Source: Macrostomum lignano
Lineage: Eukaryota
Length of the DNA: 64,000 bases
NCBI GenBank assembly: GCA_002269645.1
Contig: NIVC01001115.1
Location: forward strand, 125,403-189,402
Direction of reading: 5' to 3'
The notes under the pieces were generated by a model that saw only the letters and a program-made list of their open reading frames with translations, made no database searches and was not told the DNA's origin. How positions within the stretch are numbered: position 1 is the first letter of the stretch; the number at the start of each line of letters is the position of its first letter. Both the position numbers and the translations under genes were made by a program. This document shows, piece after piece, positions 6,375-29,404 of the stretch.

Positions 6375-6375
6375 G

Positions 6376-7610: not shown

Positions 7611-7620
7611 AATCAATCTG
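7413..7620. repeat. (TCTA)n microsatellite
   Basis: Direct reading. Confidence 0.95.
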
Positions 7621-8204
7621 TATATCCTATATACTAAAAATGTGATGTCTATATATATATATATATATATGTGATAGATTAGAGAAAAAATGGCTGGACC
7701 GATTTTGTTCGAACTTGCACTGTTCGATCAGAAATTTTCCCGTGACGGTACATGCATCGTGGCTAAGAAATTGCTCAATGCTAGAGGCATTAAATATTCG
7801 AAAAACATGCTTTTTTGCAAAGGTCAAGCAAACTTTTCGACTTGAAATGCATTGTAAGAATGCTATAGAGAAAAAACTGACTGGTTGAATTCTGACTCTG
7901 AAATAGATTGCATCATAACTGAATTGTAACTCTGACTTGAATTGAAAATGCAGTGTGGAAGCCTAGCACCAGACTTGATTTAAATTGCGTAACCATATTG
8001 TTAACTGATACTGACTGACTGAGAAACTGATTATGTCATAACTGCTTCGTGTGATTAACTCTATGCTTGGATTTTAAACTGTTGAATTATATATATATGT
8101 GCAAAATTTGATAAATGCAGCGACGATGGTTCGAATTTTCATAGAATATAATTTTTTCAATTAAAGCTTTTCAACGTCAGGAAAACTAAAAGACTTTTTA
8201 AAAA

Positions 8205-11200
8205 GAAGCGTCATGTAAAAATCATAGAAGCGTCATATAAAAATCATAGATGCGTCATTTAAAAAATCATAGAAGCATCGTATAAAAATCATAGAAGCGT
8301 CATGTAAACAATCATAGAAGCGTCATGTAAACAATCATAGAAGCGCCATGTAAAAATCATAGAAGCGTCATGTAAACAATCATAGAAGCGTCATGTAAAC
8401 AATCATAGAAGCGTCATGTAAACAATCATAGAAGCGCCATGTAAAAATCATAAAAGCGACATGTAAAAATCATAGAAGCGTCATGTAAAATCATAGAAGC
8501 GTCATGTAAACAATCATAGAAGCGTCATGAAACAATCATGGAAGCGTCATGAAACAATCATAGAAGCGTCATGTAAACAATCATAGAAGCGTCATATAAA
8601 CAATCATAGAAGCGTCATGTAAAAATCATAGAAGCGTCATGTAAACAATCATAGAAGCGTCATGTAAACAATCATAGAAGCGCCATGTAAAAATCATAAA
8701 AGCGACATGTAAAAATCATAGAAGCGTCATGAAACAATCATAGAAGCGTCATGTAAACAATCATAGAAGCGTCATGTAAACAATCATAGAAGCGTCATAT
8801 AAACAATCATAGAAGCGTCATGTAAAAATCATAGAAGCGTCATGTAAACAATCATAGAAGCGTCATGAAACAATCATAGAAGCGTCATGTAAAAATCATA
8901 GAAGCGTCATGTAAACAATCATAGAAGCGTCATGTAAACAATCATAGAAGCGCCATGTAAAAATCATAAAAGCGACATGTAAAAATCATAGAAGCGTCAT
9001 GTAAAATCATAGAATCGTCCTGCCAAAATCGTAGAAGCGTCATGTAAAAAATCCTTGAAGCGTCATGTAAACAATCATAGAAGCGTCATGAAACAATCAT
9101 AGAAGCGTCATGTAAACAATCATAGAAGCGTCATGTAAACAATCCTAGAAGCGTCATGTAAACAATCCTAGAAGCGTCATGTAAACAATCATAGAAGCGT
9201 CATGTAAACAATCCTAGAAGCGTCATGTAAACAATCATAGAAGCGTCATGTAAACAATCATAGAAGCGCCAAGTAAAAATCATAAAAGCGTCATGTAAAC
9301 AATCATTCAAGCGTCATTTAAACAATCATAGAAGCGTCATGTAAACAATCATTCAAGCGTTATTTAAACAATCATAGAAGCGTCATGTAAACAAGCATAG
9401 AAGAATGTAAACAATCATAGAAGCGTCACGTAAACAATCATTCAAGCGTCATTTAAACAATCATAGAAGCGTCATGTAAACAAGCATAGAAGCGTCATGT
9501 AAAAATCATAGAAGCGTCATGTAAACAATCATAGAAGCGTCATGTCAAAATCATAGAAGCGTCATGTAAACAATCATAGAAGCGTCATGAAACAATCATA
9601 GAAGCGTCATGTAAACAATCATAGAAGCGCCATGTAAACAATCATAGAAGCGTCATGTAAAAATCATAGAAGCGTCATGTAAACAATCATAGAAGCGTCA
9701 TGAAACAATCATAGAAACGTCATGTAAAAATCATAGAAGCGTCATGTAAACAATCATAGAAGCGTCATGTAAACAATCATAGAAGCGTCATGTAAACAAT
9801 CATAGAAGCGTCATGTAAACAATCATAGAAGCGCCATGTAAAAATCATAAAAGCGTCATGTAAAATCATAGAAGCGTCATGTAAACAAGCATAGAAGAAT
9901 GTAAACAATCATAGAAGCGTCATGTAAAAATCATAGAAGCGTCATGAAACAATCATAGAAGCGTCATGTAAAAAATCATAAAAGCGTCATGTAAAAATCG
10001 TAGAAGCGTCATGTAAAAATCATAGAAGCGTCATGTAAAATCATAGAAGCGTCATGTAAAAATCATAGAAGCGTCATGTAAAATCGTAGAATCGTCCTGC
10101 CAAAATCGTAGAAGCGTCATGTAAAAAATCATAGAAGCGTCATGTAAAAATCATAGAAGCGTCATGTAAAATCATAGAATCATCCTGCCAAAATCGTAGA
10201 AGCGTCATGTAAAAAATCCTTGAAGCGTCATGTAAACAATCATAGAAGCGTCATGAAACAATCATAGAAGCGTCATGTAAACAATCATAGAAGCGTCATG
10301 TAAACAATCCTAGAAGCGTTATGTAAACAATCCTAGAAGCGTCATGTAAACAATCATAGAAGCGTCATGTAAACAATCATAGAAGCGCCATGTAAAAATC
10401 ATAAAAGCGTCATGTAAAATCATAGAAGCGTCATGTAAACAAGCATAGAAGAATGTAAACAATCATAGAAGCGTCATGTAAAAATCATAGAAGCGTCATG
10501 AAACAATCATAGAAGCGTCATGTAAAAAATCATAAAAGCGTCATGTAAAAATCGTAGAAGCGTCATGTAAAAATCATAGAAGCGTCATGTAAAATCATAG
10601 AAGCGTCATGTAAAAATCATAGAAGCGTCATGTAAAATCGTAGAATCGTCCTGCCAAAATCGTAGAAGCGTCATGTAAAAAATCATAGAAGCGTCATGTA
10701 AAAATCATAGAAGCGTCATGTAAAATCATAGAATCATCCTGCCAAAATCGTAGAAGCGTCATGTAAAAAATCCTTGAAGCGTCATGTAAACAATCATAGA
10801 AGCGTCATGAAACAATCATAGAAGCGTCATGTAAACAATCATAGAAGCGTCATGTAAACAATCCTAGAAGCGTTATGTAAACAATCCTAGAAGCGTCATG
10901 TAAACAATCATAGAAGCGTCATGTAAACAATCCTAGAAGCGTCATGTAAACAATCATAGAAGCGTCATGTAAACAATCATAGAAGCGCCATGTAAAAATC
11001 ATAGAAGCATCATGTAAATAATCATAGAAGCGTCATATAAAAATCATAGAAGCGTTATGTAAAAATGATAGAAGCGTCATATAAAAAATCATAGAAGGGT
11101 CATGTAAACAATCATAGAAGCGTCATATAAAAATCATAGAAGCGTCATGTAAACAATCATAGAAGCGTCATGAAACAATCATAGAAGCGTCATGTAAACA

Positions 11201-11770
11201 ATCATAGAAGCGCCATGTAAAAAATCATAGAAGCGTCATGTAAACAATCATAGAAGCGTCATGTAAAAATCATAGAAGCGTCATATAAAATCATAGATGC
11301 GTCATATAAAAATCATAGATGCGTCATGTAAACAATCATAGAAGCGTCATGTAAACAATCATAGAAGCGTCATGTAAACAATCATAGAAGCGTCATGTAA
11401 ACAATCATAGAAGCGTCATGTAAAAAATCATAGAAGCGTCATGTAAAAATCATAGAAGCGTCATGTAAAAAATCATAGAAGCGTCATGTAAACAATCATA
11501 GAAGCGTCATGTAAAAAATCGTAGAAGCGTCATTTAAAAATCATAAAAAGCGTTATTTAAAAAAATCATAGAAGCGTCATGTAAACAATCATAGAAGCGT
11601 CATGTAAAAAATCATAGAAGCGTCATGTAAAAATTATAGAAGCGTCAAGAAAAAATCATAGAAGCGTCATGTAAAAAAAGTCATAGAAGCGTCATGTTAA
11701 AATCATAGAAGCGTCATGAAAAAATCATAGAAGCCTCATTTAAAAACTAATGAAAGTGTCATTTAAAAAA
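8205..11770. repeat. 22-23 bp satellite AATCATAGAAGCGTCATGTAAA(C/A)
   Basis: Direct reading. Variant blocks are duplicated with a period of about 554 bp (9887/10441, 10091/10645). Confidence 0.95.
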
Positions 11771-12653
11771 TTAAGAAGCATCATGGTACAATAAAAGAAG
11801 CGTCATGTCAGACATGAAGGGTGTCATGTAAAAATAAATGCAGCTATAATGCTGTGCTGGGGAGAAAAACTGAGACGTTAAGGCTCTCAGAGAATAACTG
11901 AGATTACGGGGGGGGGGTTGCTGAGATGTCAAAGCAAAAGTCAGAAGCTACTTCAAAGTTCATGTACTTTACTCAATTTTTTTATTACATTCTTTGTTGG
12001 CTCGCCACGGGGGGGTCGCTGATAGAAGAAGAGTCATGTAAAAAATAAAAGTAGCACTATGTATACATAAAAGAAAAGTCATGTCGAAGTTAAAAGATTC
12101 ATTTGGGAATTGCTATGATGTCAAAGCTTGGAGGGAATCGTTACAGTGCTGTGATTCTTAAAGAAGGAATCACTAAAATGTCAAGGCTTAGGGGAGAAGA
12201 ATTGCTGAGATTCAAGGCTTTAGGTTGGGTTAAAGTTAGGTTTAGGTCAGGTGTGGGTTGAGGGTTATATTTTATCGGGTTTCAGGGTTAACGGGGATTT
12301 TTCAGATTTCAAGGTTTATGGAGGCCATCGCTGACATGTCAAGGCTTACGGGGGGAATAGCTGAGATGTCAAGGCTCACGGGGGTATAAATGAGATTTCA
12401 AAGCTAAAGTCAGAAGCTACATGTAAACAATCATGTAAAGTTTATTGAAAACTTTTTATTACATTATTTGATGCCTCCTCAGGGGAGGGATCGCTGATAA
12501 AAAAAGCGTAATGTAAAAAATAAAAGAAGCTTCATGTCGAAGTTAAGAGATTCATTTGGGAATCCCTACGATGTCGAGGCTTGCAGGAAATCGCTATAAT
12601 GCTGTAGCAGTGCTATAATGACTCTTAGAGAGAATTACTGAAATGTCAATGCT

Positions 12654-12715
12654 TTAGGGTTAGGTTAGGGTTAGGGTTAGGGTTAGGGTTAGGGTTAGGC
12701 TAGGGTTAGGGTTAG
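12654..12715 (+). repeat. Interstitial telomere-like (TTAGGG)n tract in element B
   Basis: About 10 near-perfect TTAGGG units. Confidence 0.9.
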
Positions 12716-13443
12716 AAGGTTGACAGATATTTTTAGATTTCCAAGGCTTATTGGGGCATTGCTGAGATGTCAAGGGGGGGAGTTGATATGTTAAAGCTTG
12801 TGGTGGGGAATTACTGACATGTCAAGGCTTACAAGGTTTGACAGGAGATTTTTTAAGATTTCAAGGATACATGTAGCTTATTAAAAAAACGTGTAGCGAT
12901 TGCATTTCTTTGGCTCCCCAACGGGGGGCGTAGATTGCTAGTCTAAATATACTAAATCTCTAATCCTATATACTAAAAATGAGTTGTCTGTATGTGGGTA
13001 TGTGGGTATGCGATAGATTTCAGAAAAATTGGCTCAACCGATTTTCTTCAAACTTGCACCATTCGATCAGAAATTTTCCTGGGACGGTACATGCATCTTG
13101 GCTAAGAAATTGCTCAATGTTAAAGGGATTAAATATTCGAAAAACATGCTTTTTTGCAAAGGTCAAGCAAAATTTTCGACTTGAAATGCATTGTAAGAAT
13201 GCTAGAGAAAAGCCTGACTGACTGAATTTCAATTCTGATAAAGATTGCATCACAACAAGTTGAAAACAGTGTCGAAGAAATGCACACACGACTTGATTTA
13301 AATTGCGTAACCAATATTGCTAACTTGAACTGAGACTGATACTGGCTGACTGAGAAATTGATTATGTCATAACTTTTTACTCTAATTGACTTGCTATAAG
13401 AATTAAATTATAAGGGCAACAGTTCATGTTCTCCAATTGAAAA

Positions 13444-13510
13444 TAGATAGCCTAGATGCGAACAGACTGGAATGCTAATGTAGCGACCTGGGTTCGAATC
13501 TTAGTAGTGC
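13444..13510 (+). other. tRNA-derived cassette in element C
   Basis: tagcctagatgcgaacagactggaatgctaatgtagcgacctgggttcgaatcttag, followed by a T6 run. Confidence 0.55.
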
Positions 13511-13559
13511 AAAAAAAATTTTTTATCAAAACACCCTAAAACACAAAAAGCTAAACATA

Positions 13560-16500
13560 AAGGAAGCGCAATATCAAACATTAAAGAGCCAACCATCTAA
13601 AACATTAAAGAGCCACCATGTCAAACATATACATGACTCAATGTCAAACATATGCGTGACTCCATGTCAGACTTTAAGGGGCCACCATGTCGAACATTAA
13701 AGAGCCACCATTTGAACATTAAAGAGCCACCATGTCAAACATAAAAGAGCCACCATGTAAAACATATACGTGACTCCATGTCAAACATATACGTGACTCC
13801 ATGTCAAACATATACGTGACTCCATGTCAAACATATACGTGACTCCATGTCAAACATATACGTGACTCCATGTCAAACATATACGTGACTCCATGTCAGA
13901 CATTAAAGAGCCACCATGTCGAACATTAAAGAGCCTCCATGTCAAACAGATACATGACTCCATGTCAAACATATACATGACTCCATGTCAAACATTAAAG
14001 AGCCACCATGTCAAGCATTAAAGAGCCACCATGTCAAACATTGAAGAGCCACCATGTCGAACATTAAATAAACACGATGTTGAACAGTAAAGAGCCACGA
14101 TGTTGAAAATTAAAGAGCCAGACCAGGTTAAACATAAATAAGTCACCATGTCAAACATTAAAGAGCCACCATGTCTAACATTAAAGAGTCGCCATGTCAA
14201 ACATATACATGACTCCATGTAAGACATTAAAGAGCCAGGCCAGGTTAAACATAAATAAGCCACCATGTCAAACATTAAAGAGCCGCCATGTCAAACATAT
14301 ACATGACTCCATGTCAGACATTCAAGAGCCACCATGTCAAACATTAAAGAGCCACTATGTCGAACTTTAAAGAGCCACTATGTCAAACATTAAAGAATCA
14401 CAATGTAAAACATTAATGAGCCGGCATGTCGAAAATTAAACAGCCACCATGTCAAACATCAAAGAGCCACCATGTCAAACATATACATGACTCCATGTCG
14501 AACATTAAAGAGCCACCATGTCAAACATAAAAGAGCTATCATGTCAAACATTAAAGAGCCATCATGTCAAACATAAAAGAGCCACCATGTCAAACATAAA
14601 AGAGCCACCATTCCATACATTAAAGAGCCACCATGTAAAACATATACGTGACTCAAACATGAAAAACCTGATGACAAACGTGGCGAACATTAAAGAGCCA
14701 CCATGTCGAACATAAAAGAGCCACCATGTCTAACATTAAAGAGCCACCATGTCAAGCATAAAAGAGCCACCATGTCGAACAAAAAAGAGCCACCATGTCG
14801 AACATTAAAGAGCCACCATGTCCAACATATATGTGACTCCATGTCAAACATTAAAGAGCCACCATGTCAAACATTAAAGAGCCACCATGTCGAACATTAA
14901 AGAGCCACCATGTCCAACATATATGTGACTCCATGTCAAACATTAAAGAGCCACCATGTCAAACATAAAAGAGCCATCATGTCAAACATAAAAGAGCCAT
15001 CATGTCAAACATAAAAGAGCCACCATGTCAAACATAAAAGAGCCACCATGTCAAACATTAAAGAGCCATCATGTCGAACATTAAAGAGCCACCATGTCTA
15101 ACATTAAAGAGCCACCATGTCGAACATTAAAGAGCCACCATGTCTAACATCAAAGAGTCGCCATGTCAAACATATACATGACTCCATGTAAGACATTAAA
15201 GAGCCAGGCCAGGTTAAACATAAATAAGCCACCATGTCAAACATTAAAGAGCCACCATGTCGAACATTAAAGAGCCGCCATGTCGAACATTAAAGAGCCG
15301 CCATGTCAAACATATACATGACTCCATGTCAGACATTCAAGAGCCACCATGTCGAACATTAAAGAGCCACCATGTCGAACTTTAAAGAGCCAGTATGTCA
15401 AACATTAAAGAATCACAATGTAAAACATTAATGAGCCGGCATGTCGAAAATTAAAGAGCCACCATGTCAAACATCAAAGAGCCACCATGTTAAACATATA
15501 CATGACTCCATGTCGAACATTAAAGGGCCACCATGTCAAACATTAAAGAGCCACCATGTCAAACATAAAAGAGCTATCATGTCAAACATTAAAGAGCCAT
15601 CATGTCAAACATAAAAGAGCCACCATGTCAAACATAAAAGAGCCACCATGCCAAACATTAAAGAGCCACCATGTCAAACATATACGTGACTCAAACATGA
15701 AAAACCTGATGACAAACGTGGCGAACATTAAAGAGCCACCATGTCGAACATAAAAGAGCCACCATGTCAAAAATTAAAGAGCCGCAATGTCAAACATTGA
15801 AGAGAAATCATGTCTAACATTAAAGAGCCATCATGTCTAACATTAGAGAGCCACCATGTCTAACATTAAAGAGCCACCATGTCAAGCATAAAAGAGCCAC
15901 CATGTCGAACATAAAAGAACCACCATGTCGAACAAAAAAGAGCCACCATGTCGAACATTAAAGAGCCACCATGTCAAACATAAAAGAGCCATCATGTCAA
16001 ACATAAAAGAGCCATCATGTCAAACATAAAAGAGCCACCATGTCAAACATAAAAGAGCCACCATGTCAAACATTAAAGAGCCATCATGTCGAACATTAAA
16101 GAGCCACCATGTCTAACATTAAAGAGCCACCATGTCGAACATTAAAGAGCCACCATGTCTAACATTAAAGAGTCGCCATGTTAAACATATACATGACTCC
16201 ATGTAAGACATTAAAGAGCCAGGTCAGGTTAAACATAAATAAGCCACCATGTCAAACATATACATGACTCCATGTCAGACATTCAAGAGCCACCATGTCG
16301 AACATTAAAGAGCCACCATGTCGAACTTTAAAGAGCCAGTATGTCAAACATTAAAGAATCACAATGTAAAACATTAATGAGCCGGCATGTCGAAAATTAA
16401 AGAGCCACCATGTCAAACATCAAAGAGCCACCATTTTAAACATATACATGACTCCATGTCGAACATTAAAGGGCCACCACGTCAAACATTAAAGAGCCAC

Positions 16501-18215
16501 CATGTCAAACATAAAAGAGCTATCATGTCAAACATTAAAGAGCCATCATGTCAAACATAAAAGAGCCATCATGTCAAACATAAAAGAGCCATCATGTCAA
16601 ACATAAAAGAGCCATTATGTCAAACATATACATGACTCCATGTCAAACATAAAAGAGCCACCACGTAAAACATTAAAGAGCCACCATGTCAAACATAAAA
16701 GAGCCATCATGTCAAACATAAAAGAGCCACCATGTCAAACATAAAAGAGCCACCATGTCAAACATTAAAGAGCCATCATGTCGAACATTAAAGAGCCACC
16801 ATGTCTAACATTAAAGAGCCACCATGTCGAACATTAAAGAGCCACCATGTCTAACATTAAAGAGTCGCCATGTTAAACATATACATGACTCCATGTAAGA
16901 CATTAAAGAGCCAGGTCAGGTTAAACATAAATAAGCCACCATGTCAAACATATACATGACTCCATGTCAGACATTCAAGAGCCACCATGTCGAACATTAA
17001 AGAGCCACCATGTCGAACTTTAAAGAGCCAGTATGTCAAACATTAAAGAATCACAATGTAAAACATTAATGAGCCGGCATGTCGAAAATTAAAGAGCCAC
17101 CATGTCAAACATCAAAGAGCCACCATTTTAAACATATACATGACTCCATGTCGAACATTAAAGGGCCACCACGTCAAACAATAAAGAGCCACCATGTCAA
17201 ACATAAAAGAGCTATCATGTCAAACATTAAAGAGCCATCATGTCAAACATAAAAGAGCCACCATGTCAAACATAAAAGAGCCACCTTGCCAAACATTAAA
17301 GAGCCACCATGTCAAACATATACGTGACTCAAACATGAAAAACCTGATGACAAACGTGGCGAACATTAAAGAGCCACCATGTCGAACATAAAAGAGCCAC
17401 CATGTAAAACATATAGGTGACTCCATGTCAAATTTTAAAGAGCCACCATGTCGAACATTAAAGAGTCACCATGCCAAACATAAAAGAGCTACCATGTCGA
17501 ACATTAAAGAACCACCATGTCAAACATTAAAGAGCCACCATATCGAACATTAAAGAGCCACCAAGTCAAACATTAAAGAGCTACCATGTCAAACATTAAA
17601 GACCTACCATGTCAAACATTCAAGAGGCATCATGTCAAACATTCAAGAGCCACCATGTCAAACATTCAAGAGCCACCATGTCGAACATTAAAGAGCCACC
17701 ATGTCAAACATTCAAGAGCCACCATATCAAACATTCAAGAGCCACCACGTAAAACATTAAAGAGCCACCATGTCGAACATAAAAGAGCCACCATGCCAAA
17801 CATAAAATAGCCACCATGTCGAACATTAAAGAGCCACCATATTGAACATTAAAGAGCCACCGAGTCAAACATAAAAGAGCTACCATGTCAAACAATAAAG
17901 ACCTACCATGTCAAACATTAAAGAGCCACCATATCAAACATAAAAGAGCCACCATGTCAAACATATATGTGAATCCAGGTCAAACAGTAAAGAGCCACCA
18001 TGTCAAACATAAAAGAGCCACCATGTCAAACATATATGTGAATCCAGGTCAAACAGTAAAGAGCCACCATGTCAAACATAAAAGAGCCACCATGTCGAAC
18101 ATAAAAGAACCACCATGTCAAACATAAAAGAGCCACTATGTCAAACAATAAACAGACACCATGTCAGACAATAAAAAAACCCGAATCAAACATTAAAGAG
18201 CCACCATGTCAAACA
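13560..18215. repeat. 23-bp satellite CATGTCAAACATTAAAGAGCCAC with interspersed CATATACATGACTC variants
   Basis: Direct reading. Block duplications at offsets 1038 and 1638 from the ORF track (14518/15556/17194). Confidence 0.95.
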
Positions 18216-19054: not shown

Positions 19055-19115
19055 GAGAGCTAGCCTAGAGGTAAACAGACTGACTGCTAAATGCAGGGAC
19101 GATGGTTCAAATTTT
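19055..19115 (+). other. tRNA-derived cassette in element B2
   Basis: gagagctagcctagaggtaaacagactgactgctaaatgcagggacgatggttcaaattttt. Confidence 0.5.
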
Positions 19116-19164
19116 TACAGAGTTTTTTTAATTAAAGTTTTTTAACGCCAAAAAAACTAAAAAA

Positions 19165-22100
19165 TCATGGAAGCGTCATGTAAAAAATCATAAAAGCGTT
19201 ATGTAAAAAATCATAGAAACGTCATGTAAAAAATCATAAAAGCGTTATGTAAAAATCATAGAAGCGTAATGTAAACAATCATAAAAGTTTTATGTAAAAA
19301 TCATAGAAGCGTCATGTAAACAATCATAGAAGCGTCATGTAAACAATCCTAGAAGCGTCATGTAAAAAATCATAAAAGCGTTATGTAAAAATCATAGAAG
19401 CGTCATGTAAAAAGTCATAGAAGCGTCATGTAAAAATCATAGAAGCGTCATGTAAAAAATCATAGAAGCGTCGTGTAAACAATCATAGAAGCGTCATGTA
19501 AACAATCATAGAAGCGTCATGTAAAAAATCATAAAAGCGTTATGTAAAAAATCATAGAAGCGTCATGTAAAAAATCTTAGAAGCGTCATGTAAACAATCA
19601 TAGAAGCGTCATGTAAACAATCATAGAAGCGTCATGTAAAAAATCATAGAAGCGTCATGTAAAAATCATAGAAGCGTCATGTAAAAAATCTTAGAAGCGT
19701 CATGTAAAAATTATAGAAGCGTCATATAAACAATCATAGATGCGTCATGTAAAAAATCTTAAAGCGTCATGTAAAAATTACAGAAGCGTCATATAAACAA
19801 TCATAGAAGCGTCATGTAAACAATCATAGAAGCGTCATGTAAAAATCATAGAAGCGTCCTGCAGAAATCGTAGAAGCGTCATGAAATAATCATAGAAGCG
19901 TCATGTAAAAAGCATAGAAGCGTCATGTAAAAATCATAGCGTCATATAAACAATCATAGAAGCGTCATGTAAAAATCTAGAAGCGTCATGTAAAAATTAT
20001 AGAAGCGTCATATAAACAATCATAGAAGCGTCATGTAAACAATCATAGAAGCGTCATGTAAACAATCATAGAAGCGTCATGTAAAAATCATAGAAGCGTC
20101 ATGTAAAAATCATAGAAGCGTCATGTAAAAAATCATAGAAGCGTCATGTAAACAATCATAGAAGCGTCATGTAAACATCATAGAAACGTCGTGTAAACAA
20201 TCATAGAAGCGTCATGTAAAAATCAAAGAAGCGTCATGTAAAAAATCATAGAGGCATCACGTAAAAATCATAGAAGCGTCATGTAAACAATCATAGAAGC
20301 GTCATGTAAAAAATCATAGAAGCGTCATGTAAACAATCATAGAAGCGTCATGTAAACAATCATAGAAGCGTCATGTAAAAAATCATAGAAGCGTCATGTA
20401 AACAATCATAGAAGCGTCATGTAAAAATCATAGAAGCGTCATGTAAAAAATCATAGAAGCGTCATGTAAAAATCATAAGCGTCATGTAAAAACATAGAAG
20501 CGTCATGTAAACAATCATAGAAGCGTCATGTAAAAAATCATAAAAGCGTCATGAAAAAATCATAGAAGCGTCATGTAAACAATCATAGAAGCGTCATGTA
20601 AAAAATATAAGCGTCATGTAAAAACCATAGAAGCGTCATGTAAACAATCATAGAAGCGTCATATAAACATCATAGAAGCGTCATGTAAAAATCATAGAAG
20701 CGTCATATAAACAATCATAGAAGCGTCATGTAAAAATCATAGAAGCGTCATGTAAAAAATCATAGAAGCGTCATATAAACATCATAGAAGCGTCATGTAA
20801 AAATCATAAGCGTCATGTAAATCATAGAAGCGTCATGTAAACAATCATAGAAGCGTCATGTAAACAATCATAGAAGCGTCATGTAAAAAATCATAGAAGC
20901 GTCATGTAAACAATCATAGAAGCGTCATGTAAACAATCATAGAAGCGTCATGTAAAAAATCATAGAAGCGTCATGTAAACAATCATAGAAGCGTCATGTA
21001 AAAATCATAGAAGCGTCATGTAAAAATCATAGAAGCGTCATGTAAACAATCATAGAAGCGTCATGTAAACAATCATAGAAGCGTCATGTAAAAATCATAG
21101 AAGCGTCATGTAAAAATCATAGAAGCGTCATGTAAAAATCTTAGAAGCGTCATGTAAAAATCATAGAAGCGTCATGTAAACAATCATAGAAGCGTCATGT
21201 AAAAAATCTAGAAGCGTCATGTAAAAATTAGAAGCGTCATATAAACAATCATAGAAGCGTCATGTAAAAATCATAGAAGCGTCATGTAAAAATCATAGAA
21301 GCGTCATGCAAAATCATAAACGTCATGTAAAAAATCATAGAAGCGTCATGTAAAAATCATAGAAGCGTCATGTAAAAATCATAGAAGCGTCATATAAACA
21401 ATCATAGAAGCGTCATGTAAAAAATCTAGAAGCGTCATGTAAAAATTATAGAAGCGTCATATAAACAATCATAGAAGCGTCATGTAAAATCATAGAAGCG
21501 TCATGTAAACAATCATAGAAGCGTCATGTAAAAATCATAGAAGCGTCATGTAAAAATCATAGAAGCGTCATGTAAAAATCATAGAAGCGTCATGTAAACA
21601 ATCATAGAAGCGTCATGTAAAAATCATAGAAGCGTCATGTAAAAATCATAGAAGCGTCATGTAAAAATCATAGAAGCGTCATGTAAAAATCATAGAAGCG
21701 TCACGTAAACAATCATAGAAGCGTCATGTAAACAATCATAGAAGCGTCATGTAAAAAATCATAGAAGCGTCATGTAAACAATCATAGAAGCGTCATGTAA
21801 ACAATCATAGAAGCGTCATGTAAAAAATCATAGAAGCGTCATGTAAACAATCATAGAAGCGTCATGTAAAAAATCATAGAAGCGTCATGTAAAAAATCAT
21901 AGAAGCGTCATGTAAAAATCATAAAGCGTCATGTAAAAAATCATAGAAGCGTCATGTAAACAATCATAGAAGCGTCATGTAAAAATCATAAAGCGTCATG
22001 TAAAAAATCATAGAAGCGTCATGTAAACAATCATAGAAGCGTCATGTAAAAAATATAAGCGTCATGTAAAAACATAGAAGCGTCATGTAAACAATCATAG

Positions 22101-25075
22101 AAGCGTCATGTAAAAATCATAGAAGCGTCATGTAAAAATCATAGAAGCGTCATATAAACAATCATAGAAGCGTCATGTAAAAATCATAGAAGCGTCATGT
22201 AAAAATCATAGAAGCGTCATATAAAATCATAGAAGCGTCATGTAAAAAATAGAAGCGTCATGTAAACATAGAAGCGTCATGTAAACAATCATAGAAGCGT
22301 CATGTAAACAATCATAGAAGCGTCATGTAAAAAATCATAGAAGCGTCATGTAAACAATCATAGAAGCGTCATGTAAACAATCATAGAAGCGTCATGTAAA
22401 AAATCATAGAAGCGTCATGTAAACAATCATAGAAGCGTCATGTAAAAATCATAGAAGCGTCATGTAAAAAATCATAGAAGCGTCATGTAAACAATCATAG
22501 AAGCGTCATGTAAAAATCATAGAAGCGTCATGTAAAAAATCATAGAAGCGTCATGTAAAAATCATAGAAGCGTCATGTAAAAAATCTAGAAGCGTCATGT
22601 AAAAATCATAGAAGCGTCATGTAAACAATCATAGAAGCGTCATGTAAAAATCTAGAAGCGTCATGTAAAAATCATAGAAGCGTCATGTAAAAATCATAGA
22701 AGCGTCATGTAAAAATCATAGAAGCGTCATGTAAAAATCATAGAAGCGTCATGTAAAAATCATAGAAGCGTCATGTAAAAATCATAGAAGCGTCATGTAA
22801 AAATCATAGAAGCGTCATGTAAAAATCATAGAAGCGTCATGTAAACAATCATAGAAGCGTCATGTAAAAATCTAGAAGCGTCATGTAAAAATTATAGAAG
22901 CGTCATATAAACAATCATAGAAGCGTCATGTAAAAATCATAGAAGCGTCATGTAAAAATCATAGAAGCGTCATGTAAAAATCATAGAAGCGTCATGTAAA
23001 AATCATAGAAGCGTCATGTAAACAATCATAGAAGCGTCATGTAAACAATCATAGAAGCGTCATGTAAAAATCATAGAAGCGTCATGTAAAAATCATAGAA
23101 GCGTCATGTAAAAATCATAGAAGCGTCATGTAAAAAATCATAGAAGCGTCATGTAAACAATCATAGAAGCGTCATGTAAACAATCATAGAAGCGTCATGT
23201 AAAAAATCATAGAAGCGTCATGTAAAAATCATAGAAGCGTCATGTAAACAATCATAGAAGCGTCATGTAAAAAATCATAGAAGCGTCATGTAAACAATCA
23301 TAGAAGCGTCATGTAAACAATCATAGAAGCGTCATGTAAAAATCATAGAAGCGTCATGTAAAAATCATAGAAGCGTCATGTAAAAATCATAGAAGCGTCA
23401 TGTAAACAATCATAGAAGCGTCATGTAAAAATATAAAGCGTCATGTAAAAAATCATAGAAGCGTCATGTAAACAATCATAGAAGCGTCATGTAAAAAAGC
23501 ATAAAGCGTCATGTAAAAATCATAGAAGCGTCATGTAAACAATCATAGAAGCGTCATGTAAAAAATCATAGAAGCGTCATGTAAAAATCATAGAAGCGTC
23601 ATAAAAATCATAGAAGCGTCATGTAAAAAGCATAGAAGCGTCATGTAAAAAATCATAGAAGCGTCATATAAACATCATAGAAGCGTCATGTAAACAATCA
23701 TAGAAGCGTCATGTAAAAATCATAGAAGCGTCATGTAAACATCATAAGCGTCATGTAAACAATCATAGAAGCGTCATGTAAACAATCATAGAAGCGTCAT
23801 GTAAAAAATCATAGAAGCGTCATGTAAACAATCATAGAAGCGTCATGTAAACAATCATAGAAGCGTCATGTAAAAATCATAGAAGCGTCATGTAAACATC
23901 ATAGAAGCGTCATGTAAACAATCATAGAAGCGTCATGTAAAAAATCATAGAAGCGTCATGTAAACAATCATAGAAGCGTCATGTAAAAAATCATAGAAGC
24001 GTCATGTAAAAATCATAGAAGCGTCATGTAAAAATCATAAAGCGTCATGTAAAAACATAGAAGCGTCATGTAAACAATCATAGAAGCGTCATGTAAAAAA
24101 TATAAAGCGTCATGTAAAAATCATAGAAGCGTCATGTAAACAATCATAGAAGCGTCATGTAAAAAATCATAGAAGCGTCATGTAAAAATCATAGAAGCGT
24201 CATATAAACAATCATAGAAGCGTCATGTAAAAAGCATAGAAGCGTCATGTAAAAAATCATAGAAGCGTCATATAAACATCATAGAAGCGTCATGTAAACA
24301 ATCATAGAAGCGTCATGTAAAAAATCATAGAAGCGTCATATAAACAATCAAGCGTCATGTAAAAATCATAGAAGCGTCATGTAAACAATCATAGAAGCGT
24401 CATGTAAACAATCATAGAAGCGTCATGTAAAAATCATAGAAGCGTCATGTAAACAATCATAGAAGCGTCATGTAAACAATCATAGAAGCGTCATGTAAAA
24501 AATCATAGAAGCGTCATGTAAACAATCATAGAAGCGTCATGTAAACAATCATAGAAGCGTCATGTAAAAATCATAGAAGCGTCGTGTAAACAATCATAAA
24601 GCGTTATGTAAAAATCATAGAAGCGTCATGTAAAAAATCATAGAAGCGTCATGTAAAAATCATAGAAGCGTCATGTAAAAAATCATAGAAGCGTCATATA
24701 AAAAATCATAGAAGCGTCATATAAAAAATCATAGAAGCGTCATGTAAAAAATCATAGAAGCGTCATGTAAACAATCATAGAAGCGTCATGTAAAAAATCA
24801 TAGAAGCGTCATGTAAAAATCATAGAAGCGTCATGTAAACAATCATAGAAGCGTCATGTAAAAAGCATAGAAGCGTCATGTAAACAATCATAGAAGCGTC
24901 ATGTAAAAATCATAGAAGCGTCATGTAAAAATCATAGAAGCGTCATGTAAACAATCATAGAAGCGTCATGTAAAAATCATAGAAGCGTCATGTAAAAATC
25001 ATAGAAGCGTCATAAAAATCATAGAAGCGTCATCATAGAAGCATCATAAAAATCATAGAAGCGTCAAAAATCATG
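19165..25075. repeat. 22-23 bp satellite AATCATAGAAGCGTCATGTAAA(C/A), about 5.9 kb
   Basis: Direct reading. Confidence 0.95.
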
Positions 25076-25963
25076 TCATTTAAAAAATTAAGAAGCATCA
25101 TGGTAGAATAAAAGAAGCGTCATGTCAGACATGAAGGTGTCATGTAAAAATTAAATGCAGTTATAATGCTGTGCTGGGGAGAAAAACTGAGACGTAAAGG
25201 CTCTCAGAGAATAACTGAGATTACGGGGGGGTGGTTCTGAGATGTCAAAGCAAAAGTCAGAAGCTACTTCAAAGTTCATGTACTTTACTCAATTTTTTAT
25301 TGCATTCTTTGTTGGCTCGCCACGGGGGGAGGCGCTGATAGAAGAAGAGTCATGTAAAAAATAAAAGTAGCACTAAGTATACATAAAAGAAAGGTCATGT
25401 CGAAGTTAAAAGATTCATTTGGGAATTGCTACGATGTCAAAGCTTGGTGGAAATCGTTATAGTGCTGGTGATTCTTAAAGAAGGAATCACTAAAATGCCA
25501 AGGCTTAGGGGAGAAGAATTGCTGAGATTTCAAGGCTTTAGGTTGGGTTAAAGTTAGGTTTAGGTCAGGTGTGGGTTGAGGGTTATATTTTATCGGGTTT
25601 CAAGGTTAACAGGGGATTTTTTAGATTTCAAGGTTTATGGGGGCCATCGCTGACATGTCAAGGCTTACGGGGGGGGGGGAATAGCTGAGATGTCAAGGCT
25701 CACTGGGGTATAAATGAGATTTCAAGGCTAAAGCCAGAAGCTACATGTAGTTTATTGAAAACTTTTTATTACATTATTTGATGCCTCCTCAGGGGAGGGA
25801 TCGCTGATAAAAAAAGCGTAATGTAAAAAATAAAAGAAGCTTCATGTCGAAGTTAAGAGATTCATTTGGGAATCCCTACGATGTCGAGGCTTGCAGGGAA
25901 TCGCAATAATGCTGTAGTAGTGCTATAATGACTCTTAGAGAGAATTACTGAAATTTCAATGCT

Positions 25964-26055
25964 TTAGGGTTAGGGTTAGGGTTAGGGTTAGGGTTAGGGT
26001 TAGGGCTAGGGTTAGGCTAGGGTTAGAGTTGGGGTTAGGTTTTGATTAGGGTTAG
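25964..26055 (+). repeat. Interstitial telomere-like (TTAGGG)n tract in element B2
   Basis: Same position relative to flanks as the tract in B. Confidence 0.9.
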
Positions 26056-26825
26056 AAGGTTGACAGATATTTTTAGATTTTCAAGGCTTATTGGGGCATT
26101 GCTGAGATGTCAGGGGGGGGAGTTGATATGTTAAAGCTTGTGGGGGGAATTACTGACATGTCAAGGCTTACAAGGTTTGACAGGAGATTTTTTAAGATTT
26201 CAAGGATACATGTAGCATATTAAAAAAACGTGTATTGCATTTCTTTGGCTCCCCAACGGGGGGCGTAGATTGCTAGTCCATATACTAAAAATGAAAATCT
26301 TGCTTGCTTGCTTGTACGAAATCGATTTTCTCCTGAATGGCTGGACCGATTTTCTTCGAACTTGCACTGTTCGATCAGAAATTTGCCCGTGACGGTACAT
26401 GCATCTTGGCTAAGAAATTGCTTGATGCTAAAGGGATTAAATATTCGAAAAACATGCTTTTTTGCAAAGGTCAAGCAGCTCTTTCGACTTGAAATGCATT
26501 GTAAGAATGCTAGAGAAAAAACTGACTGGTTGAATTCTGATTCTGAAATAGATTGCATCATAACAATAGGCTTTTATTTATCGTCTCTGTACTGGCTGAA
26601 TTTTGACACTGAATTGAATTACGTCACAGTATTGAAAACGCAGTGTGGAAGCATAGCACAATACTTGATTTATCTTGCGTAACCATATTGCTAACTTTAA
26701 TAGACACTGGTACTGACTTGCCTAAGAAATTGATTATGTCATAACTGCCTCGTGTAACTTTTACTCTATTGACTTGGTGTGAGTGTTGAATTATAAGTGC
26801 TACAAATTCATTTACAATTTCAATG

Positions 26826-26892
26826 AGAGCTAGCCTAGATGTGAACACACTGGACTGCTAATGCAGCAACCTGGGTTCGAATCTTAGTAGTG
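26826..26892 (+). other. tRNA-Ser(GCT)-like cassette in element D (best preserved copy)
   Basis: A box tagcctagatgtg, anticodon arm ctgga-ctgctaa-tgcag, T arm ctggg-ttcgaat-cttag. The acceptor stem does not pair, so this is not an intact tRNA. Confidence 0.6.
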
Positions 26893-26974
26893 TATAAAAG
26901 AATAAAAGTAGCATAAATTTTTTATTGAAAGCTTTTATTAAAAAACTAATTAAAAAGAACTGGATTATGGATTA

Positions 26975-28225
26975 GAAGCCAAGGATTATTGTACTTGATA
27001 AACCAAGGATTATTGCACTCGATAAGCCAAGGATTACTGCGCTTGATAAACCAAGGATTATTGCACTTGATAGGCCAAGGATTACTGCACTTGATAAACC
27101 AAGGATTATTGCACTTGCTAAGCCAAGGATTATTGCACTCGATAAGCCAAGGATTACTGCGCTTGATAAACCAAGGATTATTGCACTTGATAGGCCAAGG
27201 ATTATTGCACTTGATAAGCCAAGGATTATTGCACTCGATAAGCCAAAGATTACTGCGCTTGATAAACCAAGGATTATTGCACTTGATAAACCAAGGATTA
27301 TTGCACTTGATAAGCCAAGGATTATTGCACTCGATAAGCCAAGGATTACTGCACTTGATAAACCAAGGACTACTGCGCTTGATAAACAAAGGGTTACTGC
27401 ACTTGATAAACCAAGGATTACTGCACTAGATTAACCAAGACTTACTGCACTTGATAAACCAAGGATTACTGCACTTGATAAACCAAGGATTACTGCACTT
27501 GATAAGCCAAGGATTACTGCACTCGATAAACCAAGGATTATTGCACTTGATAGGCCAAGGATTACTGCACTTGATAAACCAAGGATTATTGCACTTGCTA
27601 AGCCAAGGATTATTGCACTCGATAAGCCAAGGATTACTGCGCTTGATCAACCAAGGATTATTGCACTTGATAGGCCAAGGATTACTGCGCTTGATAAACC
27701 AAGGATTATTGCACTTGATAAGCCAAAGATTACTGCGCTTGATAAACCAAGGATTATTGCACTTGATAAACCAAGGATTATTGCACTTGATAAGCCAAGG
27801 ATTATTGCACTCGATAAGCCAAGGATTACTGCACTTGATAAACCAAGGACTACTGCGCTTGATAAACAAAGGGTTACTGCACTTGATAAACCAAGGATTA
27901 CTGCACTTGATAAGCCAAGGATTTCTGCACTTGATAAACCAAGGATTACTGCACTTGATAAACCAAGGACTACTGCATTGGATAAACCAAGACTTACGGC
28001 ACTTTATAAACCAAGGATTTCTGCACTTGATAAACCAAGGATTTCTGCACTTGATAAACCAAGACTTACTGCACTTGATAAACCAAGACTTACTGCACTT
28101 GATAAACCAAGGATTACTGCACTTGATAGACCAGAACTTACTTCACTTGATAAGCCAAGGATTACTGCACTTGATAAACCAATGATTACTGCGCTTGGCA
28201 AACAAAGGATTACTGCGCTTGATAA
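26975..28225. repeat. 24-bp satellite TTGATAAACCAAGGATTACTGCAC (rc of the A1 satellite)
   Basis: Direct reading. 480-bp higher-order duplication (ORFs 26946/27426). Confidence 0.95.
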
Positions 28226-28259
28226 GCTTGGCTATATGTATGGGATTCTTTCTATCTAG

Positions 28260-29150
28260 GGATGTTTGCTTTTTATGGATTCTTACTAACTGGGTTGATG
28301 CTTCTGCAATATTTGGGTGGTGCTTGGTATCTGCAGGATGCTTGCTGTCTGGGTGGATGCTTCTACAATATCTGGGGGGTGCTTGGTATCTGCAGGATGC
28401 TTGCTGTCTGGGTGGATGCTTGCTATCTGGGGGATGCTTGCTGTCTGGGTGGATGCTTCTACAATATTTGGGGGATGCTTGCTATCTAGCTGGATGCTTC
28501 TACAATATTTGGGGGATGCTTGTTATCTGCAGATGCTTGCTATTTGGGTGGATGCTTCTACAATATTTGGGAAATGCTTGCTGTCTGGGTGGATGCTTGC
28601 TATCTGCAGATGCTTGCTATCTGGGTGGATGCTTCTACAATATTTGGGGGATGCTTGCTATCTGCAGATGCTTGCTATTTGGGTGGATGCTTCTACAATA
28701 TTTGGGAAATGCTTGCTGTCTGGGTGGATGCTTGCTATCTGCAGATGCTTGCTATTTGGGTGGATGCTTCTACAATATTTGGGAAATGCTTGCTGTCTGG
28801 GTGGATGCTTGCTATCTGCAGATGCTTGCTATCTGGGTGGATGCTTCTACAATATTTGGGGGATGCTTGTTATCTGCAGATGCTTGCTATCTGGGTGGAT
28901 GCTTCTACAATATTTGGGGGATGCTTGCTATCTGGGTGGATGCTTCTACAATATTTGGGGGATGCTTGTTATCTGCAGATGCTTGCTATCTGGGTGGATG
29001 ATTCTACAATATTTGGGAAATGCTTGCTGTCTGCAGGATGCTCGCTATCTGGGTGGATGCTTGCTACGAGTATTAGGGGATGCTTGCTATCTGCGGTTGC
29101 TTACTTTTGGAGGGGGTGCTTGCTATCTGGAGGGATGCTTGCTGTCTTGG
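28260..29150. repeat. 18-19 bp satellite GATGCTTGCTATCTGGGTG with ttctacaatatttggg variants
   Basis: Direct reading. Confidence 0.9.
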
Positions 29151-29404
29151 GAATATTTTCTATTTAGGGTTAATGTCTGTTATCTTTGTGAAAGTTATAT
29201 TTTGTTGTATATTTGTTAATTTTAGAAAAAAATAGATTCATAGCAAATATCATTGTCCGTGACAATTTTACATGAATAAGGTGATTTTTAAAAGTTAGGA
29301 AGGAATTGGTGTTAAGGAAATTTGCATTTTTAATTGTTTTCCATTAACTATTTTTGCTCCGTGCTTATTGGGCGCCCCGAAGGGGGGCCGCACTAGATTG
29401 CTAG

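What the first reader, a model, noticed from the sequence alone, without database searches (positions are those of the whole stretch)
7625..29404. A 21.8-kb train of four Helitron-like satellite carriers (three different satellite payloads) joined exactly head-to-tail
Seen: four elements (7625-12941, 12942-18582, 18583-26276, 26277-29404) each start TC(C/T)..ATATACTAAA, followed by a short microsatellite and a shared ~300-600 bp core. Each ends in a GC hairpin plus GATTGCTAG. All three internal junctions are gap-free CTAG|TC, and the outer ends are A|TC and CTAG|T within (TCTA)n. The payloads differ: 22-23 bp AATCATAGAAGCGTCATGTAAA in B and B2, 23 bp CATGTCAAACATTAAAGAGCCAC in C, and 24 bp plus 18 bp in D. 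Known: Helitrons have 5'-TC and 3'-CTRR ends with a subterminal hairpin, insert between A and T without a TSD, and non-autonomous Helitrons (Lep1, DINE-1/DINE-TR1) can seed satellites. Inference: a hetero-train is not what rolling-circle copying of one element gives. It fits repeated insertion at the A|T formed by the host A and the first T of the resident element, which would make D oldest and B youngest. This would be a self-targeting, modular satellite-dispersal system.
Basis: partly seen in the sequence, partly recalled or inferred. Interest (0 to 1): 0.9.

Follow-up and report, generated by a model that had tools for sequence, protein, structure and literature searches.

The report
Train of satellite-carrying Helitron elements
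Four non-coding rolling-circle (Helitron-type) mobile elements, each carrying a long minisatellite, sit exactly end to end inside a simple TCTA repeat of the flatworm Macrostomum lignano; this shows clearly how such elements spread satellite DNA, but the kind of element is already known from oysters, flies and plants.

Summary
Four plus-strand elements (7625-12941, 12942/12964-18582, 18583-26276, 26277-29404) start TCC(T/A)ATATACTAAAAATG. Each then has a microsatellite, a shared core, a 22-24-bp minisatellite of 1.2-5.9 kb, and a GC hairpin plus AGATTGCTAG. All junctions are CTAG|TC and the outer flanks are A| and |T.

The window is Macrostomum lignano (NIVC01001115.1). By structure these are non-autonomous canonical Helitrons, not Helentron/HINE: no subterminal inverted repeats, no T|T site.

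New evidence:
- A homeologous locus has the same (TCTA)n microsatellite uninterrupted and without any element, so the train lies inside a pre-existing microsatellite.
- The same modules occur on another contig in a different order (D then B). They are fused there by a deletion, end in a related hairpin+CTAG|T, and are absent from two homeologs.
- A second, inverted cluster of D-type elements (1-7411) abuts the same microsatellite.
- The arrays also grow in place.

Serial insertion at a resident element's terminus is the best reading. One-step insertion of a composite is not excluded, and the proposed age order (D oldest, B youngest) is untested. No Rep/helicase partner was seen. Verdict: a new member of a known kind, of moderate interest.

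The parts
7412..7619 (.). (ATCT)n: left remnant of the target microsatellite, between the minus-strand cluster and the plus-strand train
   Evidence: TRF, 52 copies. The homeolog L006 has one uninterrupted (ATCT)n/(ATCC)n block of 1.3 kb at this place.
7625..12941 (+). Element B. 5' end TCCTATATACTAAAAATG (7625-7642); (TA)n about 7650-7671; conserved core about 7690-7925; 23-bp satellite 8204-11808; 1.13-kb tail with (TTAGGG)n at 12654-12715; hairpin 12913-12929; GTAGATTGCTAG 12930-12941
   Evidence: The 5' flank is A7624.
12942..12963 (+). 22-nt 5'-end stub TCTAAATATACTAAATCTCTAA between the 3' end of B and the full 5' end of C
   Evidence: A second case of stub plus full 5' end lies at L007 about 7712-7640, minus strand.
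12964..18582 (+). Element C. 5' end TCCTATATACTAAAAATG; (GTATGTGG)n; core; 23-bp satellite 13574-18220; 18-bp array 18315-18442; hairpin 18556-18569; CGAAGATTGCTAG to 18582
18583..26276 (+). Element B2. 5' end TCCAATATACTAAAAATG; (TTTG)n; core; 22-23-bp satellite 19160-25033; tail with (TTAGGG)n at 25964-26055; hairpin 26248-26264; GTAGATTGCTAG to 26276
   Evidence: Against B, the head is 87% and the tail 92% identical.
26277..29404 (+). Element D. 5' end TCCATATACTAAAAATG; (TTGC)n; core; 24-bp satellite 26979-28225; 18-19-bp arrays 28290-29147; tail; hairpin about 29371-29389; GCACTAGATTGCTAG to 29404
   Evidence: The 3' flank is T29405.
29405..30127 (.). (TATC)n: right part of the target microsatellite, followed by unique DNA that is syntenic with the homeolog
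   Evidence: L006 7520-10830 matches window 29406-32739 at 84.7%.
5712..7411 (-). Minus-strand cluster, upstream part. A 1-kb 24-bp array (7411->6376) starts at the normal array start but has no head before it. It joins abruptly to (GT)n plus a D-type head (6375->5712) that lacks the TC...ATATACTAAA end
   Evidence: This array is colinear with the first 1,059 bp of the next array at 92.6%. The junction is recombinant, not terminal.
1345..5711 (-). Minus-strand D-type element body (D'): 24-bp array 5711->2029, 18-bp arrays 2010->1604, tail, hairpin about 1373-1355, 3' end ...CACTAGATTGCT (the terminal AG is missing)
   Evidence: (tail 91% identical to the D tail).
905..1344 (-). Element E fragment directly after the D' 3' end: a unique 68-nt leader, (GT)n, and a core 88% identical to the D' head, truncated after about 360 nt

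Best explanation
The four units are separate copies of related non-autonomous Helitrons of the canonical type (HLE1).

Architecture: 5' terminus, microsatellite, conserved ~225-bp core, variable spacer, minisatellite payload(s), tail, and a 3' hairpin followed by CTAG.

Proposed history:
1. The elements entered a pre-existing (TCTA)n microsatellite about 5.7 kb upstream of a G-alpha gene of Macrostomum lignano.
2. The train was built by the Rep/helicase transposase of an unseen autonomous partner, which joined each incoming copy exactly to the terminus of a resident copy. The most likely site is the A|TC junction of the resident 5' end. That is the sequence the enzyme nicks anyway, and it also satisfies the A|T target rule and fixes the orientation.
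3. After insertion the minisatellites grew in place by unequal exchange.
4. Deletions across element junctions fuse neighbours into new carriers with two payloads.

Shown: the terminal structure, the exact junctions, the absence of the train from a homeolog that keeps the intact microsatellite, the recurrence of the modules elsewhere in another order, the in-situ array duplications, and the recombinant junctions.

Inferred: the transposase, the targeting of termini, and the direction and number of insertion events.
For: Helitron structure:
- TC starts, CTAG ends, a 5-7-bp GC hairpin 12-15 nt from the end, and A and T flanks.
- The termini are conserved although the B-type tails have no match in the C- or D-type tails.
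- No subterminal inverted repeats.
- Related ends elsewhere in the genome: L001 ...GCTCCCCGAAGGGGGGCAAAACTTTAGCTAG|T and L007 caA|TCAGATATACTAAAA....

Insertion into a microsatellite:
- Homeolog L006 has left flank, uninterrupted (ATCT)n/(ATCC)n and the same right flank, with no module of the elements.

Not chance:
- The microsatellite offers about 230 equivalent CTA|TCT sites, yet three junctions are exactly end to end with no TCTA remnant between units (my arithmetic gives at most about 1e-6 for independent random hits).

Not one amplified unit:
- B and B2 are 87-92% identical. The heads are 72-89% identical. The payloads are unrelated.

Chains recur in another order:
- L001 has D array, 18-bp array and 28 nt of D tail, fused to the last 100 nt of a B head, B satellite and B tail, all in the same orientation. 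It is absent from homeologs L002 and L003.
- In the window, the D' 3' end is directly followed by head E.

Support for the 5' side as target:
- 5'-end stubs sit directly upstream of full 5' ends (window 12942-12963; L007, where no 3' end lies upstream).

Mechanistic plausibility:
- Helraiser nicks exactly at A|TC and CTAG|T and makes precise CTAG|TC joints (PMC4778049).

Array growth in place:
- Exact 80-mers recur at offsets of 554, 692, 480 and 1488 bp.
Against: - Only one intact train was seen.
- No nucleotide-level empty site is available, because the target is a microsatellite.
- No Rep/helicase gene was found in 243 kb of M. lignano DNA.
- The direction of growth and the number of events cannot be read from the sequence.
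- Array homogeneity (B 89%, C 80%, B2 91%, D 87%) does not follow a left-to-right age order.
- Three junctions (window 6375, window 7411, L001 about 32317) are recombinant, so recombination also shuffles these modules.
- The D' 3' end lacks the terminal AG, and the next head has a different leader.
- The right flank starts TATC, whereas the uninterrupted copy of the left-flank motif continues TCTATC. This 2-nt discrepancy is unexplained.
- Helraiser shows no local hopping and no reported end-targeting.
Confidence: 0.5

Rival explanations
1. One-step insertion of a pre-formed composite. The train, or parts of it, formed elsewhere and moved as one unit from the 5' end of B to the 3' end of D. 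This could happen by read-through of internal 3' ends (end bypass) or as a multimeric circle.
For: End bypass and transduction are documented for Helraiser. Maize Helitrons with multiple termini are explained this way (PMC3288121). One event would explain why there is no microsatellite remnant between the units.
Against: All three internal 3' ends keep an intact hairpin and CTAG, whereas 99% of maize internal pseudo-termini have lost CTAG. The only other chain seen has a different order, D then B. This model still needs a first end-to-end joining somewhere.
Confidence: 0.22
2. Serial stacking at the 3' side. Each new copy is joined to the CTAG|T junction of the resident 3' end, so the rightmost element is the youngest. 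Alternatively, hetero-dimers form when two elements are processed together.
For: The transposase also cuts exactly at the 3' end on both strands in vitro. The final sequence would be identical to the one observed. The stub directly follows the 3' end of B.
Against: G|T is not the canonical A|T target. In L007 a stub plus a full 5' end exist with no 3' end upstream. C would have had to land exactly at the end of a stub that has no 3' signal.
Confidence: 0.13
3. No transposition at this locus. The cluster arose by unequal crossing-over, segmental duplication and gene conversion among resident repeats, and the boundaries only look like termini.
For: Recombinant junctions exist and the arrays duplicate in place.
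Against: Three different pairs of partners are joined at exactly the same two nucleotides, with conserved termini and otherwise unrelated neighbouring sequence. The units are 8-28% diverged. The same termini bound the train against host A and T. Related termini occur on other contigs.
Confidence: 0.07
4. Assembly artefact. The long repetitive reads were mis-joined within the shared cores or arrays.
For: The M. lignano assembly is known to be difficult because of repeats (PMC10733133). A neighbouring 273-bp array is 100% identical over 11 copies, which may reflect polishing.
Against: The junctions lie in unique combinations of diverged sequence, not inside shared repeats. B and B2 differ throughout. 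The same module adjacency is seen on an independent contig.
Confidence: 0.05
5. The elements are Helentron-derived HINEs (the DINE-1 / Cg_HINE type), not canonical Helitrons.
For: The overall architecture is the same: 5' box, microsatellite, conserved box, central tandem repeats, 3' palindrome (PMC7492417; PMC8268682).
Against: There are no consistent 11-15-bp subterminal inverted repeats. The flanks are A and T, not T and T. The ends are TC and CTAG.
Confidence: 0.08

Closest known systems
Oyster Helitron-N / Cg_HINE satellite carriers (Crassostrea gigas; PMC7492417, PMC8268682)
   Same: Non-autonomous. Conserved 5' box, microsatellite, conserved internal box, central tandem repeats always in one orientation, and a 3' box with palindrome. 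Related flanks can carry unrelated repeats. Some elements carry two consecutive arrays. Complex shuffled loci occur.
   Different: In the oyster the monomers are 140-180 bp in arrays of 2-29 copies. Here they are 18-24 bp in arrays of 50-260 copies (1-6 kb). Cg_HINEs have subterminal inverted repeats and T-rich/TT sites. Here there are none, and the flanks are A|T. Exact heterologous head-to-tail trains were not reported in the papers read here.
DINE-1 / DINE-TR1 and other HINEs (Helentron derivatives; PMC4067079)
   Same: A microsatellite plus central tandem repeats between conserved ends, a 3' stem-loop, and a source of satellite DNA.
   Different: The defining subTIRs and TT target are absent here.
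Tandem arrays of Helitrons (Myotis, Drosophila Y Helitron-1_DPe, plant centromeres; PMC9248874, PMC5148889, review PMC12628747)
   Same: Precise 3'-end to 5'-end junctions in the genome. Multiple 5' termini. Attributed to rolling-circle replication or to insertion at the end of another copy.
   Different: Those arrays consist of copies, often truncated, of one element. Here four different family members with three unrelated payloads are joined, and every internal terminus is intact.
Maize Helitrons with multiple termini (PMC3288121)
   Same: Several Helitron ends in one orientation within one block. Stepwise build-up of composite elements.
   Different: The maize internal 3' ends are pseudo-termini without CTAG, and nesting is proposed rather than end-to-end joining.
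Hydractinia subtelomeric Helitron-like repeat with associated minisatellite (PMC11934779)
   Same: A Helitron-derived unit coupled to a minisatellite and locally amplified to large blocks.
   Different: It is a single 372-bp unit with only partial Helitron affinity, and it is subtelomeric. Here the elements have full termini and lie at an interstitial site next to genes.

Membership tests
Canonical Helitron (HLE1), non-autonomous | 5' terminus begins with TC | tested here: met
   TCC(T/A)ATATACTAAAAATG at 7625, 12964, 18583 and 26277. The stub at 12942 also starts TC.
Canonical Helitron (HLE1), non-autonomous | 3' terminus ends CTRR | tested here: met
   All four end ...AGATTGCTAG. The L001 relative ends ...TTAGCTAG. 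The minus-strand D' ends ...GATTGCT without AG.
Canonical Helitron (HLE1), non-autonomous | Short GC-rich hairpin about 10-12 nt upstream of the 3' end | tested here: met
   Stems of 5-7 bp, CCCC(A/G)A(C/A)GGGG, lie 12-15 nt from the end. DNA folds give -5.4 to -9.8 kcal/mol. The z-scores are modest (-0.8 to -2.0) because the sequences are short.
Canonical Helitron (HLE1), non-autonomous | Insertion between host A and T without target-site duplication | tested here: inconclusive
   The outer flanks are A7624 and T29405. The L001 3' flank is T and the L007 5' flank is A. The homeolog has the uninterrupted microsatellite, but the exact site cannot be mapped in a repeat. There is a 2-nt TA ambiguity at the right flank.
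Canonical Helitron (HLE1), non-autonomous | Autonomous partner encoding Rep/helicase with the same termini | not testable with these tools
   No such ORF was seen among the ORFs listed for the window and part of L005. Gene calls in the nine loci (243 kb with the window) name no Rep or helicase family. The whole genome could not be searched.
Canonical Helitron (HLE1), non-autonomous | Dispersed copies with conserved ends and presence/absence between related loci | tested here: met
   The modules occur on NIVC01000539.1 (L001), absent from homeologs L002 and L003. A 5' end fragment lies on NIVC01001114.1 (L007). The train is absent from homeolog L006.
Helentron / HINE (HLE2; DINE-1, Cg_HINE) | 11-15-bp subterminal inverted repeats at both ends | tested here: not met
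   The longest match between the 5' and 3' ends is no better than in shuffles for B, C and B2. D has one 13-nt match, equal to the shuffle maximum.
Helentron / HINE (HLE2; DINE-1, Cg_HINE) | Insertion between T and T, with T runs at the boundaries | tested here: not met
   The 5' flank is A (or the G of CTAG within the train). There are no T runs at the ends.
Helentron / HINE (HLE2; DINE-1, Cg_HINE) | 5' box, microsatellite, central tandem repeats, 3' palindrome | tested here: met
   The same layout is present. It is shared by oyster elements annotated as Helitron-N, so it does not discriminate between the families.
Rolling-circle concatemer of a single Helitron | Neighbouring units are copies of one element | tested here: not met
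   The heads are 72-89% identical, the B-type tails have no match in the C- or D-type tails, and there are three unrelated payloads.

The most novel reading that the evidence does not exclude
The Helitron transposase of M. lignano prefers the terminal junction of a resident Helitron as its integration site. It may also prefer (TCTA)n, which resembles the TC-TATA... 5' end. Heterologous head-to-tail trains therefore grow by self-targeting. Deletions across the junctions then fuse neighbours into new carriers with new payload combinations. Together with in-situ array growth, this would be a main engine behind the unusual load of minisatellites in this genome.
Probability: 0.3. Interest if true: 0.65.

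Novelty: new member of a known kind. Interest (0 to 1): 0.45.

Why it matters
M. lignano is a regeneration model. Its genome is about 75% repeats and is hard to assemble because of 'simple repeats and transposons' (PMC10733133). No paper found here describes its Helitrons or satellites.

This locus shows a concrete family of Helitron-type carriers. They place 18-24-bp minisatellites, and even telomere-type repeats, next to genes. The arrays expand in place, and the elements are present in one genome copy and absent from a homeolog.

If end-targeted insertion is real, it would give a simple mechanism for how rolling-circle elements turn into complex satellite blocks. It could be tested with a reconstructed transposase.

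If not, the locus is still a well-resolved example of a known relationship between Helitrons and satellite DNA, now in a new phylum.

Tried and rejected
- Protein searches with the core ORF (26308-26679) and with an ORF of the 24-bp array (27451-28182) found no relatives. The core is not coding: the ATG is lost in three of six copies, and there is a 1-nt and an 11-nt indel.
- The core shows no RNA or DNA structure signal (z = -0.8, no covariation).
- A tRNA-like look of the head 3' half (GGTTCGAATC) was not confirmed by ARAGORN or Rfam.
- Homology between the B and C satellites was not significant.
- Subterminal inverted repeats were not found.
- Exact-pattern scans of metagenome and prokaryote genome collections for the core and the B satellite found nothing.
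- P0001, the G-alpha protein, is not on record in the contig index.
Ids from the listing of cluster members worked instead.
- The 99%-identical contig (L005/L007) lacks the train. But it has lost the whole microsatellite and 420 bp of unique DNA that the homeolog keeps, so it is a deletion derivative. It says nothing about the order of insertions.
- The flank of the L001 composite has no counterpart in L002 or L003, so no base-level empty site was obtained.
- Pritham & Feschotte 2007 could not be read.

Full report
**1. The observation**

Reading the sequence at the stated coordinates confirms every boundary.
- B starts at 7625 (A|TCCTATATACTAAAAATG) and ends at 12941 (...GCTCCCCAACGGGGGGCGTAGATTGCTAG).
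- B2 runs 18583-26276 and D runs 26277-29404. D is followed by T and then (TATC)n.
- The decamer AGATTGCTAG occurs exactly four times in the 64 kb, at the four 3' ends only.
- ATATACTAAA occurs exactly at the four 5' ends, in one stub and at one other site.
- A 15-mer of the shared core occurs six times against 0.05 expected.
- Tandem Repeats Finder gives the payloads as described. B has 23 bp x161 (8204-11808). C has 23 bp x202 (13574-18220). B2 has 22-23 bp x263 (19160-25033). D has 24 bp x52 (26979-28225) plus 18-19-bp arrays (28290-29147).
- The B and C monomers are not significantly alike.

Corrections and additions:
- The unit called C starts with a 22-nt 5'-end stub (12942-12963). A second, complete 5' end follows at 12964.
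- C also has seven copies of the 18-bp repeat of D.
- The B and B2 tails contain (TTAGGG)10-16.
- The region left of the finding holds a second cluster on the minus strand.

**2. Anatomy**

Each element consists of these parts in order:
- a ~18-nt 5' terminus;
- a different microsatellite in each element: (TA)n, (GTATGTGG)n, (TTTG)n or (TTGC)n;
- a ~225-bp core that is 92-99% conserved among all six heads in the window;
- a more diverged 300-400-bp spacer;
- the minisatellite(s);
- a tail;
- a 5-7-bp GC hairpin 12-15 nt before the terminal CTAG.

The B-type tails (1.1 kb) have no match in the C- or D-type tails, yet the last ~30 nt are shared by all. Conserved ends around variable insides are what a transposase-recognised element looks like.

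The core is not a gene. The ATG is not conserved and there are indels of 1 nt and 11 nt. It shows no structure signal. It corresponds in position to the conserved internal 'Box 3' of oyster Helitron-N elements (PMC8268682).

No subterminal inverted repeats link the two ends.

**3. Organism and locus**

A G-alpha exon in the window is identical to a Macrostomum lignano UniRef protein. Locus L004 from GCA_002269645.1 contig NIVC01001115.1 is 100% identical to window 24987-55934.

The train ends 5.7 kb upstream of the start codon of that G-alpha gene (exon 1 is at 35095-35232). It ends 2.3 kb upstream of a small WSC-domain gene (31753-32349).

**4. Related loci**

Protein ids obtained through cluster look-ups gave access to eight further M. 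lignano loci. With the window this makes 243 kb in all.

(a) L006 (NIVC01000092.1) is a homeolog.
- L006 7520-10830 aligns with window 29406-32739 at 84.7%.
- To the left of that lies one uninterrupted block, (ATCT)n then (ATCC)n, of 1.3 kb, and then unique DNA.
- No head, tail or satellite of the elements is present.
- So the microsatellite is ancestral, and the train lies inside it in the window's copy.

(b) L005/L007 (NIVC01001114.1) is 99.0-99.6% identical to the window from 31174 rightwards.
- To the left it joins directly to the sequence that forms the left flank of the microsatellite in L006.
- It has lost the microsatellite and 420 bp that both other copies keep. It is therefore a deletion derivative and is uninformative about the train.

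(c) L001 (NIVC01000539.1) carries a composite on its minus strand, in this order:
- a D-type 24-bp array, the 18-bp array and 28 nt of D tail;
- then, at a 2-nt microhomology, the last ~100 nt of a B-type head, 48 copies of the B satellite and a B tail (86% identical to B) including (TTAGGG)n;
- the B tail is cut ~100 nt before its end and is followed by 465 nt of other sequence;
- the composite ends GCTCCCCGAAGGGGGGCAAAACTTTAGCTAG|T.

The simplest reading is a former D-then-B train that lost its 3'-5' junction by deletion. The two homeologs L002 and L003 (93-95% identical up to about 200 bp from that end) lack it.

(d) L007 has a solo 5' fragment on its minus strand: caA|TCAGATATACTAAAAAATGAAAACTT|TCTATATACTAAAATGAAAATCTTGC(TTGC)n. 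It has no core behind it, and it is again a stub followed by a full 5' end.

**5. The minus-strand cluster in the window**

Reading the minus strand from 7411 downwards:
- 1 kb of 24-bp array starts at the normal array start. It is colinear at 92.6% with the start of the next array.
- It joins abruptly to (GT)n and a D-type head without a canonical 5' end.
- Then come 3.7 kb of array, the 18-bp arrays and a tail 91% identical to that of D.
- Then comes the hairpin and ...CTAGATTGCT.
- It is followed at once by a 68-nt unique leader, (GT)n and another core (E).

So head-to-tail order recurs here, but these junctions are recombinant or decayed. The two clusters face each other with their 5' sides across the 208-bp microsatellite remnant.

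**6. Mechanism**

A concatemer of one element is excluded by the divergence of the units.

Chance abutment is excluded. The microsatellite has about 230 equivalent CTA|TCT sites (208 + 723 bp). Three independent hits exactly on a terminal junction would have a probability of about 1e-6 or less (my arithmetic). No TCTA remnant separates the units.

What remains is a transposase-made joint. Helraiser nicks exactly at A|TC and at CTAG|T, and it makes precise CTAG|TC joints in circles (PMC4778049). A resident 5' junction is therefore a ready-made, oriented A|T target.

Three observations fit insertion at the 5' junction:
- the stubs sit directly upstream of full 5' ends, once without any 3' end nearby;
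- the outer flanks are A and T;
- all units have the same orientation.

The same final sequence would also arise from joining at the 3' junction, or from a single insertion of a pre-formed composite by end bypass. One train cannot separate these. I therefore give serial end-targeted insertion 0.5, and the alternatives 0.22 and 0.13.

The suggested age order has no support. B and B2 are each other's closest relatives (92%), and array homogeneity does not follow position.

Two further processes are shown directly:
- Arrays grow in place. Exact 80-mers recur at offsets of 554 bp in B, 692 bp in C, 480 bp in D and 1488 bp in D'.
- Deletions or unequal exchange across neighbouring units create chimeras (window 6375; L001 about 32317). 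This is a plausible origin of carriers with two payloads, such as C and D themselves.

**7. Comparison with what is known**

Definitions of HLE1 versus HLE2 are taken from PMC11417382 and PMC4067079.
- The elements meet the structural criteria of canonical Helitrons and fail the two criteria specific to Helentron/HINE.
- The layout (5' box, microsatellite, internal box, tandem repeats, 3' box), related flanks with unrelated repeats, elements with two arrays, and shuffled loci are all described for Crassostrea gigas (PMC7492417; PMC8268682; review PMC12628747).
- Tandem Helitrons and multiple termini are known from bats, flies, plants and fungi.

What is different here:
- the host phylum (I found no paper on Helitrons or satellites of M. 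lignano);
- the very short monomers in very long arrays;
- the exact joining of four different family members with all termini intact.

**8. Verdict**

I file it as a new member of a known kind, of moderate interest. The self-targeting idea is reasonable and testable but not shown.

Limits of this work:
- only one intact train;
- assembly-based sequence with no read support;
- no autonomous partner;
- the empty site is resolved only to the level of the microsatellite.

Noticed in passing
window 35289-38317 (flanked by (CTAT)n at 35242-35314 and 38303-38829): A 273-bp unit repeated 11.1 times with 100% identity lies inside intron 1 of the G-alpha gene. It is absent from the 99%-identical contig, which has only (CTAT)118, and from the homeolog L006. 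It is either a very recent insertion or expansion in a (CTAT)n microsatellite, or it was lost elsewhere by recombination between the flanking microsatellites. It has no Rfam match and no Helitron-like ends.
   Followed up: partly
window 12654-12715 and 25964-26055; L001 about 30235-30265 (minus strand): Telomere-type (TTAGGG)n runs of 5-16 units are part of the tail of the B-type elements in all three copies seen. This family therefore spreads interstitial telomeric repeats.
   Followed up: partly
L001 8726-9036, L002 about 8806-9019, L003 about 8738-9028: A 29-bp satellite (GGGGGAATTGCTGAGATGTCAAGGCTTAC) has the same motif that is repeated inside the B tail. It sits at the same place upstream of a paralogous G-alpha gene in three homeologs, so it is an older, element-free array of an element-derived motif.
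   Followed up: no
window 57428-57442: TCCTATATACTAAAA is an exact 15-mer of the 5' terminus. It is preceded by T, and no core follows it. It could be a solo 5' fragment, another family, or chance.
   Followed up: partly
L005 1-6193 / L007 8643-9426 versus window 1-31173: Two contigs of the same assembly are 99% identical to the right of window 31174 and unrelated to the left of it. One copy has the >=30-kb repeat cluster. The other has a deletion of the microsatellite, 420 bp of unique DNA and most of (GGAGA)n. This is structural heterozygosity or a difference between near-identical subgenomes.
   Followed up: yes
window 31753-32349: A WSC-domain gene is present in the window but is annotated only on the allelic contig (PAA72090.1). 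It is one of a tandem family of small WSC genes around the G-alpha gene (four more lie at window about 46.4-55.1 kb).
   Followed up: partly
window about 8125-8140, 13490-13505, 19103-19118, 26873-26888: The 3' half of every head carries a GGTTCGAATC-like motif (it resembles a tRNA B box) within a tRNA-like-looking stretch. ARAGORN and Rfam find nothing.
   Followed up: yes
L001 (whole locus), window 30488-31136, 33496-34486, 39443-39833, 44469-44975: Introns and intergenic DNA of M. lignano are packed with unrelated micro- and minisatellites of 4-64-bp period. One 21-bp array lies inside the G-alpha gene region.
   Followed up: no
window 53399-53845 and 57708-58058 (minus strand): There is a fragment of a mariner/Tc1-like transposase (...HDNASAYKS...PPYSPDLA...) and an SH2-domain exon of a neighbouring gene. 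No Rep/helicase coding sequence occurs anywhere in the window.
   Followed up: no
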